Numbered from the whole stretch's first letter, positions 11,128 through 19,577 are shown. The stretch is 63,786 bases of DNA, filler included, from Octopus bimaculoides (GCF_001194135.2; 12 parts of 10 records of this genome joined end to end with filler, not necessarily neighbours in it); one strand, 5' to 3'. Numbers and translations: made by a program. Notes: generated by a model from the letters alone, not told the origin.

Positions 11128-11302
11128 AGTTGATGGGGGCATGTCACAAATCAAGAAGATATTTGGCAAGAAGTTCCACAGAAATTTCCCAACTGAAAGA
11201 CGGCCAGAGACACAACAGTGTGGCCCAGGCGTCTACCCCACAACTTCTAGGGGGCAGTTCAAGACTAAAGGCTTGGATTTATTACTAGAATCAGATTCAA
11301 GG
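11128..11302 (+). CDS. Exon 1 of chain 1: N-terminal part of a LECT2-like (M23-fold) domain
   Basis: Acceptor tttcag|A at 11128, donor AGG|gtgaga at 11303; phase 2 to 0. Translation VDGGMSQIKKIFGKKFHRNFPTERRPETQQCGPGVYPTTSRGQFKTKGLDLLLESDSR. The CGxGxY...KGLDLL segment parallels LECT2 GCGQY...HQGVDIL (aligned by eye). Confidence 0.8.
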
Positions 11303-11731
11303 GTGAGACTTTTCTGGAACTTTCTAATTTCTAGTATCAAAACAAATGTGACACTTTTACTTCTTGTTTTTGTTATTATTGCTGTTGTTATTGTCAGTGT
11401 TGTTGTTGCTCCTCCAACCCCTCTTCTTCTTCATCATCATCATCATTCTTTAATGCCCATTGTTGATGTCGTTGGTCTGTCGTATGGATCTGTGCAGGCA
11501 ATCCTTACATCTGAACTGAACATGCAACATGTCTCTGTCAAGAGAGCAGAAAGAACATCGCTGGCAGAANNNNNNNNNNNNNNNNNNNNNNNNNNNNNNN
11601 NNNNNNNNNNNNNNNNNNNNNNNNNNNNNNNNNNNNNNNNNNNNNNNNNNNNNNNNNNNNNNNNNNNNNTTTTAATTGAGTTTTTACCTGTAATTTTGGA
11701 TTTTATCCGTAATATTATATATTATATATAA

Positions 11732-11898
11732 AAGCACCCACTACACTCTCTGAGTGGTTGGCGTTAGGAAGGGCATCCAGCTGTAGAAACTCTGCCAAAT
11801 TAGATTGGAGCCTGGTGTTGCCATCCGGTTTCACCAGTCCTCAGTCAAATCGTCCAACCCATGCTAGCATAGAAAGAGGACGTTAAACGATGATGATG

Positions 11899-11899
<1 letters not shown>
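11732..11899 (+). mobile_element. SINE/LINE-tail family 3 (RTE-type 3' end with (GAT)n tail)
   Basis: cacccactacactc..gagtggttggcgttaggaagggcatccagc..tccaacccatgctagcat..(gat)n; further copies at about 12870-13100, 14690-14950, 52050-52170 and 54895-55032 (-). Confidence 0.7.
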
Positions 11900-11941
<42 letters not shown>

Positions 11942-12038
11942 ATATATATATATATGATATGTGTCAATTCTAACTTCAACGCAATCTGTGTGGACAAATA
12001 CTCCCCTCACATCTCATAGCCATTTTATTCCCTTCCAG

Positions 12039-15306: not shown

Positions 15307-15581
15307 CAATCTCTTTATCGAGAGTAATGAAGGCACGGCATCCCAGCACACCATCGGAAGCATCTTGTCCTTACTGCGGGGCAGATCGAACAACACAAAA
15401 GCCGACATATTGTTGCATATTGCCAAGGAATTCAACAAAGCCAAGAGAAACATACCTGCAATGCCTGCTGACGCATATTCGTTACCACAACTGCAGAACC
15501 TGTTGGCTGGTTTTGGTCTCTCGTCACAGCACGGAGACCACCTCAGTTTGATCGACCGAGTAAGGAAACTGCCTGGTCTGG
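15307..15581 (+). CDS. Exon 4 of chain 1
   Basis: Acceptor gttttccag|C, donor G|gtaagt; phase 2 to 1. (F)NLFIESNEGTASQHTIGSILSLLRGRSNNTKADILLHIAKEFNKAKRN...RVRKLPGL; complex sequence between two trinucleotide arrays. Confidence 0.8.
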
Positions 15582-17234
15582 GTAAGTGTTGCTGTTCATA
15601 TTTTCTCCATTTGACTACTACTACTACTACTATGACAAATTTCACTACTACCACCACCACCACCACTACTACAAATACAGTGGCAAATTTTACTACAGCC
15701 ACCACCACCACTACCACTACCACCACTACCATCACTACCACCACAACCATTACTACTACTACAACTACTACTGCTACTACTACTAGAGTTATGTTGTATA
15801 TAGCTCAAAGATGAAAAACTGATTGAACTTCATAATAAAGCCATTTTCTGAAATATCTCATTCTTTTCATCCCTTCGGGTCGATGAAATTAGTACCAGTT
15901 GTGCACTGGGATCGAGCTAATCGACTGCCCCACCCCGCTCCCCTAAAATTTTGGGTTTTGTGCCTAAAGTAGAAAAGAAATGCTTAGCGGTATTTCGTCT
16001 GCTGTTACTTCTGAGTTCAAATATATATATATATATATATATANNNNNNNNNNNNNNNNNNNNNNNNNNNNNNNNNNNNNNNNNNNNNNNNNNNNNNNNN
16101 NNNNNNNNNNNNNNNNNNNNNNNNNNNNNNNNNNNNNNNNNNNNNNNNNNNNNNNNNNNNNNNNNNNNNNNNNNNNNNNNNNNNNNNNNNNNNNNNNNNN
16201 NNNNNNNNNNNNNNNNNNNNNNNNNNNNNNNNNNNNNNNNNNNNNNNNNNNNNNNNNNNNNNNNNNNNNNNNNNNNNNNNNNNNNNNNNNNNNNNNNNNN
16301 NNNNNNNNNNNNNNNNNNNNNNNNNNNNNNNNNNNNNNNNNNNNNNNNNNNNNNNNNNNNNNNNNNNNNNNNNNNNNNNNNNNNNNNNNNNNNNNNNNNN
16401 NNNNNNNNNNNNNNNNNNNNNNNNNNNNNNNNNNNNNNNNNNNNNNNNNNNNNNNNNNNNNNNNNNNNNNNNNNNNNNNNNNNNNNNNNNNNNNNNNNNN
16501 NNNNNNNNNNNNNNNNNNNNNNNNNNNNNNNNNNNNNNNNNNNNNNNNNNNNNNNNNNNNNNNNNNNNNNNNNNNNNNNNNNNNNNNNNNNNNNNNNNNN
16601 NNNNNNNNNNNNNNNNNNNNNNNNNNNNNNNNNNNNNNNNNNNNNNNNNNNNNNNNNNNNNNNNNNNNNNNNNNNNNNNNNNNNNNNNNNNNNNNNNNNN
16701 NNNNNNNNNNNNNNNNNNNNNNNNNNNNNNNNNNNNNNNNNNNNNNNNNNNNNNNNNNNNNNNNNNNNNNNNNNNNNNNNNNNNNNNNNNNNNNNNNNNN
16801 NNNNNNNNNNNNNNNNNNNNNNNNNNNNNNNNNNNNNNNNNNNNNNNNNNNNNNNNNNNNNNNNNNNNNNNNNNNNNNNNNNNNNNNNNNNNNNNNNNNN
16901 NNNNNNNNNNNNNNNNNNNNNNNNNNNNNNNNNNNNNNNNNNNNNNNNNNNNNNNNNNNNNNNNNNNNNNNNNNNNNNNNNNNNNTATATATATATATAT
17001 GTATGTATGTGTGTTTGTGTGCCTGTGTTTGTGTGCCTGTGTTTGTCCCCGCAACATCGCTTGACAACTGATGCTGGTGTGTTTATGCCTTCGTAACTTA
17101 GCTGTTCAGCAAAACAGACCAATAGAATAAGTACTAGGCTTACAAAGAATAGTCCTGGGGTCAATTTGCTCGACTAAAGGTGGTACTCCAGCATGGCCAC
17201 AGTCAAGTGACAACCAAGTAAAAGTATATATATA

Positions 17235-17815
17235 CGAGGAGGTACCCAAAAGTAACTGGAAACGTTCTTTGTGAAACAAGCCAGTTGTAGTTCAGGCTTC
17301 TGCCACTAGAAGTCACTTGATGCAACCTTCAGGCATCAGTCTGTCAACCAGCATCGTTCACTGGAGTCATACTGCCATGTAGTGTGCTTTTGTTATGCAG
17401 TGCTTGTCTACTGTTTATCGATTTTTGCAATGGCTGAAATGAAGGAACAGCATGCTTCCCTCAAATTCTGTTGATGAACTTGTTGATATGACTGGTGTGT
17501 CCTGGAGCTCTTGCCAAAGAATTTTGAGTGAGGAATTTTGGATGAAAACAGTTGCAGCAAAACTTGTGTCTTGCTTGTTCACGGAAGATCAGAAGCAGTC
17601 ATGGCTGAATGCAAGTTGTTCACGGAAGATCAGAAGCAGTCACGGCTGAATGCAAGTTGTTCACGGAAGATCAGAAGCAGTCACGGCTGAATGCAAGTTG
17701 TGAACTGAAAGAACAATTGAAAGTGGATCTTGCTTCCTGTTACCTTTTTTGTTACTTTGAATCGAAAATGTCCTTAAGACAAAAAACTTTTGAAGATGTG
17801 GAAGAGAAGTAGCAA
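17235..17815 (+). mobile_element. Mariner deletion derivative with an internal 41-bp triplication
   Basis: TA-cgaggaggtacccaaaagtaac TIR; translation remnants AAKLVSCLFTEDQKQSRLNASCELKEQL. A same-family 3' end with the reverse TIR lies at about 59560-59902. Confidence 0.7.
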
Positions 17816-19379
17816 AAAACTTTATTTTTTCTGTCTCCGATGAAGGGAAGTACTGGATCTTCCCAGAAACAGCTGTAAGACTCTATCCATAAAATTCTTC
17901 AACCTTACCTTTGCTCTCTTTATCCTTTTGTTTTTATATATTTGCATANNNNNNNNNNNNNNNNNNNNNNNNNNNNNNNNNNNNNNNNNNNNNNNNNNNN
18001 NNNNNNNNNNNNNNNNNNNNNNNNNNNNNNNNNNNNNNNNNNNNNNNNNNNNNNNNNNNNNNNNNNNNNNNNNNNNNNNNNNNNNNNNNNNNNNNNNNNN
18101 NNNNNNNNNNNNNNNNNNNNNNNNNNNNNNNNNNNNNNNNNNNNNNNNNNNNNNNNNNNNNNNNNNNNNNNNNNNNNNNNNNNNNNNNNNNNNNNNNNNN
18201 NNNNNNNNNNNNNNNNNNNNNNNNNNNNNNNNNNNNNNNNNNNNNNNNNNNNNNNNNNNNNNNNNNNNNNNNNNNNNNNNNNNNNNNNNNNNNNNNNNNN
18301 NNNNNNNNNNNNNNNNNNNNNNNNNNNNNNNNNNNNNNNNNNNNNNNNNNNNNNNNNNNNNNNNNNNNNNNNNNNNNNNNNNNNNNNNNNNNNNNNNNNN
18401 NNNNNNNNNNNNNNNNNNNNNNNNNNNNNNNNNNNNNNNNNNNNNNNNNNNNNNNNNNNNNNNNNNNNNNNNNNNNNNNNNNNNNNNNNNNNNNNNNNNN
18501 NNNNNNNNNNNNNNNNNNNNNNNNNNNNNNNNNNNNNNNNNNNNNNNNNNNNNNNNNNNNNNNNNNNNNNNNNNNNNNNNNNNNNNNNNNNNNNNNNNNN
18601 NNNNNNNNNNNNNNNNNNNNNNNNNNNNNNNNNNNNNNNNNNNNNNNNNNNNNNNNNNNNNNNNNNNNNNNNNNNNNNNNNNNNNNNNNNNNNCAATAGT
18701 CTTGACTCTGTCCGTTATTTACGCTGCGTTCTCTCTTTGCTTTTGCGCATGTGTGTGTCTCAGTGTGTGTGTATGTATGTGTGCATGTGTGTGTATGTAT
18801 GTCTGTGTGTGTATGTATGTGTGTGTATGCATATATGTACGTATGTGTGTGCGTTTGCATGTATGTCTGTATTCTGCATATTCCTATGTTTGTGTATTTT
18901 TTATGTATGTGTGTGAATGTGTGTATATGTATGTACCTCTGTCTCCTTGTGTGTGCATGTTTGAGTGTGTGTGTGTGTGTGTGTGCGTGTGTGTTTTGCT
19001 GCTATGTACCATGTTTGTATGTATGGGTGCACATCTCCATATGTGTGGACATGTGTCTTTGTGTGAAGTAAAGTGTGTGTGTATATGTGGTCATGTGTTT
19101 CAGTCTCTATTTGCGTATGTGGTTGTAGATATACATATATATGTGTGTGTGTGTGTGTGCATATATATATATATATGTATGTATATCTATGTATATATGT
19201 GTATGTATAACAAAAGAGAAAATGGAGCTCATGTGATTCTTTATTAATTACAGCAGTCCTTTTGATCCTTCTTGCATTGGTCCCCCTCAGCCGAAATTCT
19301 GAAGATTAGTTAAAGTTTGGGGTATTATCATCACCATCATCATTATCATCATTGTTGTCCTTGTTATTTCTATCAACAG

Positions 19380-19577
19380 TTTGCACCGGCATGCGGAATA
19401 TAATATCTAGTGGACTGGGGCACGTCTGCCTCCCAGACCGAGACTGCCTCGGACTAACTTGTAATGTCGAACTGAATTTCAATGGTGTCCAAGCTTCAAC
19501 AGAATTCGGCCTCAGATACGACAGCTGCACAGGTCAATTTTACATCACAACAGGAAAAACAACAACAATAGCAAAAG
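19380..19577 (+). CDS. Exon 5 of chain 1: Cys-rich extracellular module
   Basis: Acceptor tcaacag|TT, donor G|gtaatg; 198 nt, phase 1-1. VCTGMRNIISSGLGHVCLPDRDCLGLTCNVELNFNGVQASTEFGLRYDSCTGQFYITTGKTTTIAK (5 Cys). Confidence 0.8.

What the first reader, a model, noticed from the sequence alone, without database searches (positions are those of the whole stretch)
11128..19577. LECT2-like/M23 pseudo-peptidase domain embedded in a large multi-exon invertebrate protein
Seen: five exons on one scaffold with canonical GT-AG sites and matching phases (2/0/0/2/1), giving about 407 aa with no stop and open at both ends. Exons 1-2 read CGPGVY...KTKGLDLLLESDSR|LVNPMTGVI...NVKP...GTILG...NSIHV...DPGTYI. 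Established: LECT2/M23 domains bind Zn through HxxxD and HxH motifs (human LECT2 HQGVD, SHVH, DPTAYL). Here HxxxD is TKGLD and HxH is SIH, so two motif His residues are lost. Inference: a catalytically dead LECT2-like binding module, possibly for glycan or pathogen recognition, used as an internal domain rather than as the small free cytokine of vertebrates.
Basis: partly seen in the sequence, partly recalled or inferred. Interest (0 to 1): 0.75.

Follow-up and report, generated by a model that had tools for sequence, protein, structure and literature searches.

The report
Dead LECT2-like M23 domain in giant mollusc protein
The five exons are real and encode an internal stretch of a giant secreted mollusc protein; its first two exons form a LECT2-like M23 peptidase fold that has lost most catalytic and zinc-binding histidines, so it most likely binds rather than cuts.

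Summary
Five + strand exons (11128-11302, 12039-12407, 13274-13479, 15307-15581, 19380-19577) have AG/GT borders, compatible phases and splice to 407 aa with no stop. All three N gaps lie in introns 1 and 4. Homologous proteins and a gap-free orthologous locus (L001) show no exon hidden in a gap.

Pfam and PDB searches with the window's own sequence find nothing. An exhaustive HMMER search found 51 relatives; every credibly named one is a mollusc "uncharacterized protein", up to 5123 aa. A 12-sequence profile of the domain matches LECT2 (hhalign 97%, E 1e-10). Against the PDB it hits only M23/LytM proteins and LECT2. One paralogue reaches the Pfam Peptidase_M23 threshold. AlphaFold models (scallop domain pLDDT 91.8; window exon 2 pLDDT 86.2) have M23/LytM structures as best Foldseek matches.

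The window reads TKGLD for HxxxD and SIH for HxH. The third catalytic His position is hydrophobic in all 38 aligned sequences, and LECT2 is described as lacking that His. Two Batillaria paralogues keep HPGVD plus HxH.

The host homologues start with a Vitellogenin_N lipoprotein head and carry PAN and fn3-like modules. This architecture is absent from the papers searched. The binding role is inferred, and the ligand is unknown.

The parts
11128..11302 (+). Exon 1 (175 nt; the first base completes a codon begun upstream). It encodes ...IFGKKFHRNFPTERRPETQQCGPGVYPTTSRGQFKTKGLDLLLESDSR, the N-terminal part of the M23/LECT2-like domain.
   Evidence: AG acceptor and GTGAGA donor. tblastn from mollusc homologues gives E down to 3e-16. 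The orthologous exon in L001 is 8181-8357, 61% identical.
11264..11278 (+). TKGLD, the degenerate counterpart of the M23 HxxxD zinc motif (His replaced by Thr, Asp kept).
   Evidence: hhalign pairs it with LECT2 HQGVD. Among 12 full-length homologues the motif is T in 7, H in 2 (HPGVD), and D is invariant. L001 reads KTKGVD.
11303..12038 (+). Intron 1, phase 0. It contains assembly gap 11570-11669 and one copy of a SINE-like interspersed repeat.
   Evidence: Homologues are continuous across the junction.
12039..12407 (+). Exon 2 (369 nt, 123 aa): the core of the M23-like fold, from LVNPMTGVI to DPGTYIDRMLPRPHWIQECNDYKFTHIGQ.
   Evidence: An exhaustive HMMER search with this exon found 51 relatives, best E 1.1e-31. 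The AlphaFold model has pLDDT 86.2. Its top 8 Foldseek matches are all M23/LytM domains, best PrgK LytM at E 7.5e-4.
12252..12260 (+). SIH, the degenerate counterpart of the M23 HxH motif (first His replaced by Ser, second His kept).
   Evidence: Among 38 aligned homologues HxH is intact in 6 and the second His is kept in 32. L001 reads PNSIHL.
13274..13479 (+). Exon 3 (206 nt): a Lys-rich, poorly conserved linker containing the conserved EPPYRPRGF motif.
   Evidence: Canonical splice sites. Homologue ORFs P0124, P0074, P0078 and P0101 run uninterrupted through the exon 2/3 junction (IGQ|VFDS vs LGQVFES) and share EPxYxPxG. L001 counterpart is 11450-11704.
15307..15581 (+). Exon 4 (275 nt): continuation of the linker region, with no recognised domain.
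   Evidence: Canonical splice sites. L001 counterpart is 13730-13975, 39% identical, E 3.6e-13. It is colinear in the BLASTP HSPs.
15582..19379 (+). Intron 4, phase 1. It contains gaps 16044-16985 and 17949-18693, a decayed mariner-like transposon fragment and microsatellites.
   Evidence: No homologue residues are missing at junction 4/5. The gap-free L001 intron lies between 13975 and 19858.
19380..19577 (+). Exon 5 (198 nt): the start of a conserved Cys-rich module, VCTGMRNIISSGLGHVCLPDRDCLGLTCNVELNF...; the gene continues beyond the piece.
   Evidence: tblastn from homologues gives E 1.5e-7 to 6e-5. L001 counterpart is 19858-20055, E 9.9e-12. The cysteines are conserved in MAFFT.

Best explanation
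The piece holds five consecutive internal exons of a very large secreted protein gene of a mollusc. A cephalopod is my guess and is untested.

Exons 1-2 encode a ~170-residue domain with the M23 (LytM/lysostaphin) peptidase fold, of the LECT2 type. Of the five residues that make an M23 enzyme, only the Asp of HxxxD and the second His of HxH remain. The zinc-ligand His is Thr, the first His of HxH is Ser, and the third catalytic His position is Ile.

The domain is therefore most likely a non-catalytic pseudo-peptidase. Its retained beta-sheet groove would serve as a binding surface for a protein or peptide ligand, as degenerate LytM domains (EnvC, NlpD, SpoIIQ) and LECT2 do. Exons 3-4 form a low-conservation linker, and exon 5 starts a Cys-rich module.

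In the full-length homologues this block follows a signal peptide and a Vitellogenin_N lipoprotein head. It is followed by PAN, fn3-like and cadherin-like modules. The whole protein thus looks like an extracellular lipoprotein-like scaffold.

Shown here: the gene structure, the homology, the fold and the motif states. Inferred: lack of catalysis, the binding role, secretion, and any link to lipid transport or defence.
For: Gene structure.

Homology to M23/LECT2:
- hhalign of family profile A2 against LECT2 alignment A1 gives 97% probability, E 1e-10, 101 columns.
- The A2 profile against the PDB hits only M23-fold proteins: LytU 5kqb E 1.6e-4, LECT2 5b0h/9non E 2.4e-4, SpoIIQ 0.0049, PrgK 0.0087, 9gy1 0.33.
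- Pfam Peptidase_M23 matches paralogues over the homologous region: P0107 28.8 bits against a cut-off of 28.7, E 1.4e-6; P0123 E 0.004; P0105 E 0.0067.

Fold:
- The AlphaFold model of the scallop orthologue domain (P0080 728-899) has pLDDT 91.8 and pTM 0.82. Its top 50 Foldseek PDB matches are all M23/LytM proteins: lysostaphin E 1.6e-5, LytM, EnpA, EnvC, DipM, Csd2, SpoIIQ.
- The model of window exon 2 alone has pLDDT 86.2. Its top 8 matches are all M23/LytM.

Motifs:
- Alignments and tallies.
- The position aligned to LytU's catalytic His (YLHL) is I/V/L in all 38 homologues.
- The same degenerate TKG(L/V)D and NSIH(V/L) occur in the 50-60% identical orthologue in L001, so the state is old and maintained.

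Host architecture:
- Vitellogenin_N at the N-terminus of P0126 (51.9 bits, profile 26-545 of 590), P0089, P0092, P0107 and P0125. PAN_1 and fn3 lie downstream, and Cadherin_5/Big_9 are found in P0080.

Precedent: degenerate M23 folds act in protein-protein interaction, and LECT2 lacks the catalytic His (PMC9662197).
Against: - The window's own sequence gives no Pfam match at E<=10 and no PDB sequence match. The assignment rests on transitive, profile-level and predicted-structure evidence.
- The full-domain model is of a 40%-identical scallop orthologue, because the tools refuse spliced sequences. Only exon 2 of the window itself was modelled.
- Foldseek TM-scores are moderate (0.45-0.55 by query length). 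LECT2 itself is not among the 50 listed matches.
- The Vitellogenin_N head and the downstream modules lie outside the piece and are known only from homologues.
- Two of the three zinc ligands remain, so weak or alternative metal binding is not excluded.
- No expression data, no ligand and no organism identification were available.
Confidence: 0.85

Rival explanations
1. The domain is still an active M23 metallopeptidase, for example a bacteriolytic module of an immune protein, using an altered metal site.
For: The Asp of HxxxD is invariant and the second His of HxH is kept in 32 of 38 homologues. Two Batillaria paralogues (P0099, P0103) keep HPGVD plus HxH. The fold is intact.
Against: The window lacks the zinc-ligand His (Thr) and the first His of HxH (Ser). 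The third catalytic His position is hydrophobic in every family member, including those with an intact zinc site. LECT2, which is inactive, is described as lacking the catalytic His. The degenerate state is conserved in the orthologues.
Confidence: 0.06
2. The exons encode a small free LECT2 orthologue of an invertebrate, like the vertebrate cytokine or nematode LECT-2, and not an internal domain.
For: The profile similarity to LECT2 includes the N-terminal C...CGxGxY segment, which the bacterial M23 matches do not cover (LECT2 matches profile positions 14-60; bacterial chains start at 28-35).
Against: The reading frame is open at both ends with split codons. All 407 aa align colinearly to internal parts of proteins of 1189-5124 aa. 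Exons 3-5 have conserved counterparts downstream of the domain. Only one of the six LECT2 cysteines is conserved.
Confidence: 0.02
3. The reading frame is a chance, pseudogenic or mis-scaffolded product: exons from different genes joined across assembly gaps.
For: Three N gaps lie inside the span. Exons 3 and 4 are weakly conserved, and tblastn from distant homologues does not find them on their own.
Against: There are no stops and all splice sites are canonical. The order and orientation are the same as in seven homologous proteins and in the gap-free locus L001, where exons 3 and 4 are found at E 8.8e-6 and 3.6e-13. The intron positions read in L001 match those of the window.
Confidence: 0.02
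4. The domain is a relatively recent horizontal acquisition of a bacterial or phage LytM domain, unrelated to the LECT2 lineage, and the resemblance to LECT2 is only the shared fold.
For: 97% of M23 domains are bacterial (PMC9662197). The best PDB profile hit is bacterial LytU, marginally ahead of LECT2. The Foldseek top 50 are all bacterial or phage proteins.
Against: The domain is split by a phase-0 intron conserved between two species. Many homologue ORF fragments start at the same profile position, 46-56. It occurs in bivalves, gastropods and the window's species. The R-x-C-D-x3-C-G-x-G-x-Y segment of the Batillaria paralogues matches LECT2's R-T-C-D-R-H-G-C-G-Q-Y. The family also lacks the same catalytic His that LECT2 is described as lacking.
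Confidence: 0.05

Closest known systems
LECT2 (leukocyte cell-derived chemotaxin 2, chondromodulin II; PDB 5B0H)
   Same: It has the M23 fold without the third catalytic His. Profile-profile match: 97%, E 1e-10. The CGxGxY segment before the (H)xxxD strand, the P(F/V)xG strand, the (Y/N)(I/V)KP segment and the terminal DPxxY(L/I) are shared. It is presumably a binding protein rather than an enzyme.
   Different: LECT2 is a free ~133-residue secreted protein with an intact His-Asp-His zinc site and three disulfides. Here the domain is internal to a multi-thousand-residue protein. It has lost the zinc-ligand His and the first His of HxH, and keeps only one LECT2 cysteine (equivalent to Cys41). 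It adds its own invariant pair of cysteines and an FGxKFHxxFP leader.
Degenerate bacterial LytM domains (EnvC, NlpD, SpoIIQ, Csd2, DipM)
   Same: They have the M23 fold with incomplete metal or catalytic residues, used as a protein-binding module. They are among the structural matches, and SpoIIQ is among the profile matches.
   Different: They are bacterial cell-envelope proteins that regulate amidases or form channels. There is no sequence relationship beyond the fold-level motifs, and they lack the LECT2-type N-terminal segment.
Active M23 peptidases (lysostaphin, LytM, LytU, EnpA, LasA)
   Same: They are the best fold matches and the best single PDB profile hit (LytU). The Asp of HxxxD, the second His of HxH and the DPxxF/Y tail are shared.
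   Different: They possess HxxxD, HxH and the middle catalytic His and bind zinc. The window lacks three of these five residues.
Large lipid transfer proteins (vitellogenin, apolipophorin, apoB, MTP)
   Same: Full-length homologues of the window's gene begin with a Vitellogenin_N domain: 51.9 bits in P0126, covering profile 26-545 of 590.
   Different: None of the classical members, to my knowledge, carries an M23 domain, PAN or long fn3-like arrays. No paper in the searched library pairs the two Pfam names. That part of the gene is outside the window.

Membership tests
Peptidase M23 (Pfam PF01551), as a fold/homology family | Significant match to the PF01551 profile | tested here: inconclusive
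   The window's 407 aa give no match at E<=10. Paralogue P0107 reaches 28.8 bits against a cut-off of 28.7 over the homologous region, and P0123 and P0105 are sub-threshold. Homology is transitive, through the family profile.
Peptidase M23 (Pfam PF01551), as a fold/homology family | M23/LytM beta-sheet fold | tested here: met
   The orthologue domain model has pLDDT 91.8, and its top 50 Foldseek hits are all M23/LytM. The window exon 2 model has pLDDT 86.2, and its top 8 hits are all M23/LytM. These are predicted, not solved, structures.
Active M23 metallopeptidases | HxxxD motif (His and Asp zinc ligands) | tested here: not met
   The window reads TKGLD. The Asp is kept and the His is replaced by Thr.
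Active M23 metallopeptidases | HxH motif (first His catalytic, second His a zinc ligand) | tested here: not met
   The window reads SIH. Only the second His is kept.
Active M23 metallopeptidases | Third (middle) catalytic His | tested here: not met
   The position aligned to LytU's YLHL His is Ile in the window and I/V/L in all 38 homologues.
Active M23 metallopeptidases | Zinc binding and peptidoglycan or glycyl-bond cleavage | not testable with these tools
   This needs recombinant protein, metal analysis and an activity assay.
LECT2 family | Sequence-profile similarity to LECT2 over the whole domain | tested here: met
   hhalign of A2 against A1 gives 97% probability, E 1e-10, 101 columns. 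The PDB profile hit to 5b0h/9non has E 2.4e-4. The single sequence alone is weak.
LECT2 family | Free-standing small (~130-150 aa) secreted protein | tested here: not met
   The frame is open at both ends, and the domain is internal in homologues of 1189-5124 aa.
LECT2 family | Intact His-Asp-His zinc site | tested here: not met
   The first His is lost in the window. The site is intact only in Batillaria paralogues P0099 and P0103.
LECT2 family | Three conserved disulfides (six invariant cysteines in alignment A1) | tested here: not met
   Only the Cys of CGxG aligns with a LECT2 cysteine. The LECT2 positions C60, C99 and C142 are non-Cys in the window. Batillaria paralogues also keep the CDxxxC pair.
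Large lipid transfer protein superfamily (host protein) | N-terminal Vitellogenin_N domain | not testable with these tools
   It is met in homologues P0126, P0089, P0092, P0107 and P0125. The corresponding part of the window's gene lies outside the piece.

The most novel reading that the evidence does not exclude
Molluscs possess a previously undescribed class of giant secreted lipoprotein-like proteins: a Vitellogenin_N head, a LECT2-type pseudo-M23 domain, then PAN, fn3-like and cadherin-like arrays. In this class the dead peptidase groove would work as a recognition module, for example for bacterial peptidoglycan peptides or for a receptor. That would couple lipid carriage to defence or adhesion. 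The family would be the nearest invertebrate multidomain relative of the vertebrate hepatokine LECT2, hinting that LECT2's link with lipid metabolism is ancient.
Probability: 0.15. Interest if true: 0.65.

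Novelty: new variant of a known kind. Interest (0 to 1): 0.45.

Why it matters
M23 domains are overwhelmingly bacterial, and LECT2 is described as the only mammalian member (PMC9662197). Finding a LECT2-type degenerate M23 domain as a conserved internal module of multi-thousand-residue, lipoprotein-headed proteins across bivalves, gastropods and the window's species does three things:

- It gives a first handle on a family that databases list only as "uncharacterized" and that Pfam mostly misses.
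- It shows a graded series of motif decay within one family, from an intact zinc site to loss of two His, which is useful for studying how pseudo-enzymes evolve.
- It offers an outgroup for asking where LECT2 came from.

It is a sound annotation result rather than a surprise in mechanism.

Tried and rejected
- Pfam on the spliced 407 aa at E<=10 found nothing.
- phmmer against the PDB returned only a chance helical match to a designed aBAK protein, E 1.3.
- The word-indexed protein search with the 407 aa returned zero hits. With the family alignment it returned only Batillaria fragments. This index misses the family; the exhaustive HMMER search was needed.
I therefore used exon 2 alone and a scallop orthologue.
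- hhalign of the single window sequence against LECT2 gave only 22% probability.
- The larger, fragment-rich alignment A3 gave a weaker PDB profile result (best E 0.18), because the N-terminal third drops out of the profile.
- P0116, a moth "CPSF1" fragment, is a false relative: four tandem copies of a short coincidental match. It is rejected as evidence for a non-mollusc member.
- The region downstream of the domain in Haliotis (residues 1140-1860) has no PDB sequence relative.
- Literature searches for LECT2+M23+invertebrate, for Vitellogenin_N+Peptidase_M23 and for LECT2+mollusc found nothing relevant.
- Rfam and tRNA scans of the piece were empty.
- The inverted repeats reported at 16018-17013 are an artefact of the N run flanked by (TA)n.

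Full report
OBSERVATION

The piece 10669-20528 was read in full. On the + strand there are five open segments bounded by canonical splice signals: 11128-11302, 12039-12407, 13274-13479, 15307-15581 and 19380-19577. Spliced, they give 1223 nt and 407 codons with no stop. Split codons at both ends show that the gene continues on both sides.

ASSEMBLY GAPS

The N runs are at 11570-11669, 16044-16985 and 17949-18693. The first lies in intron 1 and the other two in intron 4, so no reading frame crosses a gap. The remaining risk was a hidden exon or a mis-join. Three tests argue against both.

- The spliced protein aligns in a single colinear HSP with internal regions of seven large homologues, for example P0092 576-971 at E 4.5e-54. 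A MAFFT alignment leaves no homologue residues unmatched at junctions 1/2 and 4/5.
- A gap-free 20.4 kb locus from a related genome (L001, ENA ERZ21867824 contig ctg122422l, reached through the closest hit P0073) carries all five exons in the same order. The E-values are 1e-18, 1.6e-39, 8.8e-6, 3.6e-13 and 9.9e-12. At the borders I read (both borders of exons 1 and 2, the acceptors of exons 3 and 5, the donor of exon 4), the splice positions and phases match the window.
- tblastn of the homologues against the readable sequence finds exons 1, 2 and 5 and nothing else.

ORFs of several homologues (P0124, P0074, P0078, P0101) run straight through the exon 2/3 junction, reading LGQVFES against the window's IGQ|VFDS. 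They share the downstream EPxYxPxG motif.

WHAT THE DOMAIN IS

Direct searches with the window's sequence fail. There is no Pfam family at E<=10, no PDB sequence relative and no hit in the word-indexed protein database. Human LECT2, recalled from memory and verified as identical to 5B0H, aligns by BLASTP only over 37 residues (35% identity, E 2e-4).

An exhaustive HMMER search of 1.84 billion representatives with exon 2 found 51 relatives, 21 of them at E<=1e-10. All credibly named ones are molluscan "uncharacterized" or "hypothetical" proteins:

- Haliotis: 5123 and 5124 aa
- Ylistrum: 4640 aa
- Argopecten: 3277-3478 aa
- Batillaria: up to 3341 aa
- Pecten, Pinctada, Mytilus, Potamilus and Elysia

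One moth hit is a repeat artefact.

A 12-sequence alignment of the full domain (A2) gives the decisive statistics.

- hhalign against a 15-sequence LECT2 alignment (A1) returns 97% probability, E 1e-10, over 101 columns running from CGxGxY to DPxxY.
- hmmsearch of the PDB returns six chains at E<=1, all with the M23 fold: LytU 1.6e-4, LECT2 2.4e-4 (two sequences), SpoIIQ 0.0049, PrgK 0.0087 and an M23 peptidase 0.33.
- Pfam's Peptidase_M23 model matches the homologous region of three paralogues. One of them (P0107) is at the curated threshold.

An AlphaFold2 model of the scallop orthologue's domain is confident (pLDDT 91.8, pTM 0.82). Its 50 best Foldseek matches in the PDB are all M23/LytM proteins. 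The window's exon 2 alone, modelled with 37 homologues, gives pLDDT 86.2, and its eight best matches are again all M23/LytM.

MOTIF STATES

In the alignments the window's T-K-G-L-D pairs with LECT2's H-Q-G-V-D, and S-I-H pairs with H-x-H. The zinc-ligand His and the first His of HxH are therefore lost, while the Asp and the second His are kept. The position aligned with the third, catalytic His of active enzymes (LytU YLHL) is Ile in the window and I/V/L in all 38 aligned homologues.

A review describes LECT2 as the sole mammalian M23 member, a degenerate fold lacking the catalytic His (PMC9662197). The family shares that state.

Across the family the decay is graded. Two Batillaria paralogues keep HPGVD plus HxH and a LECT2-like R-x-C-D-x3-C-G segment. 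Six of 38 sequences keep HxH. Most giant orthologues read T-x-G-V-D and N-F-I-H. The orthologue in L001, 50-60% identical, has the same KTKGVD and PNSIHL as the window. The degenerate state is therefore old and maintained rather than a recent decay.

Only LECT2 among the PDB matches covers the profile's N-terminal segment: positions 14-60, against starts at 28-35 for the bacterial chains. I read this as favouring kinship with LECT2 over an independent bacterial origin. The phase-0 intron inside the domain is conserved in L001. Many homologue fragments also begin at the same profile position.

THE HOST PROTEIN

The homologous 400-residue block lies at about residues 580-1400 of the large proteins. 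Their N-termini match Vitellogenin_N, the lipoprotein amino-terminal region. P0126 scores 51.9 bits over profile 26-545 of 590, and P0089, P0092, P0107 and P0125 also pass the cut-off. Further downstream are PAN_1, fn3-like repeats and, in Ylistrum, Cadherin_5/Big_9-like modules.

The Haliotis protein begins with what looks by eye like a signal peptide. None of this lies in the window, so for the window's gene it is an inference from orthology. No paper in the searched library describes such an architecture.

HOW IT MOST LIKELY WORKS

I commit to a non-catalytic, LECT2-type pseudo-peptidase domain, with about 0.85 confidence for loss of catalysis. Its conserved groove would serve as a binding surface inside a giant extracellular lipoprotein-like scaffold. 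The analogues are degenerate LytM domains, which act as protein-interaction hubs, and LECT2 itself. The binding role (about 0.6) and any ligand (peptidoglycan peptide, receptor, or another part of the same protein) are inferred, not shown.

Exons 3-4 are a poorly conserved, charged linker. Exon 5 begins a Cys-rich module of unknown fold that is conserved in all large homologues.

RIVALS

- An active peptidase is unlikely, given three missing catalytic or metal residues.
- A free LECT2 orthologue is excluded by the open ends and by colinearity with giant proteins.
- A chance or mis-scaffolded ORF is excluded by L001.
- A recent bacterial acquisition is disfavoured by the conserved intron, the spread across molluscs and the LECT2-specific N-terminal segment. 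It would need a proper phylogeny to settle.

VERDICT

- Within this family the zinc-site loss looks secondary, since two Batillaria paralogues keep it.
- The third catalytic His is absent family-wide, as it is in LECT2.
- The host is a Vitellogenin_N-headed giant protein.
- The family was seen only in molluscs.

The finding is a new variant of a known kind of domain. It is a useful annotation of an uncharacterised family and moderately interesting.

Noticed in passing
window 11730-11908, ~12949-13104, 14774-14951: Three copies, 80-91% identical, of a ~170 nt interspersed SINE-like repeat, each ending in a (GAT)n tail. One sits in each of introns 1, 2 and 3, all in the same orientation (families D5 and D6). 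No tRNA or Rfam match.
   Followed up: partly
window ~17220-17810: A decayed mariner/Tc1-like transposon fragment in intron 4. The translation reads ...KLFTEDQKQSRLNASCELKEQLKVD... with several stops, which by my reading resembles transposase N-terminal regions. Inside it is a 41 nt unit repeated 3.1 times at 98% identity (17575-17701).
   Followed up: partly
window 15080-15264 and 15617-15785: Exon 4 is flanked on both sides, within ~40 nt of each splice site, by long imperfect (CCA/ACT)n trinucleotide arrays of similar composition (family D3). The cause is unexplained; unequal exchange between them could delete or duplicate the exon.
   Followed up: no
window 12669-12828: A 42 nt tandem repeat, 3.9 copies at 73% identity, in intron 2. 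It follows a run of (ATC/GTC)n-like triplets at 12510-12640.
   Followed up: no
window 10867-11100, 13850-14385, 18750-19210: Dense microsatellites: (AGAC)n, (AGAT)n, (GATG)n, (TA)n and (TG)n. Gap 16044-16985 is bordered by (TA)n on both sides, and (TG)-rich arrays begin ~55 nt after gap 17949-18693. This probably explains why the assembler stopped there.
   Followed up: no
window 19800-19960 and 15960-16010; 20210-20330: Further short interspersed repeats. The motif 'aaatgcttagc(a/g)gtatttcgtctgc...gttctgagttcaaat' occurs twice. A tRNA-like-looking SINE head ('ggttagag...gttgtgagtttgattcccgga') was seen by eye but is not called by ARAGORN.
   Followed up: no
homologues P0099, P0103 (Batillaria attramentaria): These paralogues retain a complete HPGVD plus HxH zinc site and a LECT2-like RRDCDxxCxCG segment, yet still lack the third catalytic His. 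They look like the least-derived members, and Batillaria carries many paralogous copies or fragments.
   Followed up: partly
homologue P0125 (Haliotis rubra) residues ~1950-4000: The C-terminal two-thirds of the giant protein consists of many ~100-residue repeats sharing W-x-G/D-F-x-D-x-E-S-G-I-x-x-Y and D-x-T-P-P motifs. Pfam sees these only faintly, as fn3. The repeat family was not identified.
   Followed up: no
L001 (ENA ERZ21867824, ctg122422l 260528-280929): A contig deposited in a metagenome-type assembly carries the clear five-exon orthologue of this animal gene, so it is eukaryotic (probably molluscan) host DNA. Prokaryote-style gene calling had turned exon 2 into a stand-alone 133 aa 'protein', P0073.
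   Followed up: partly
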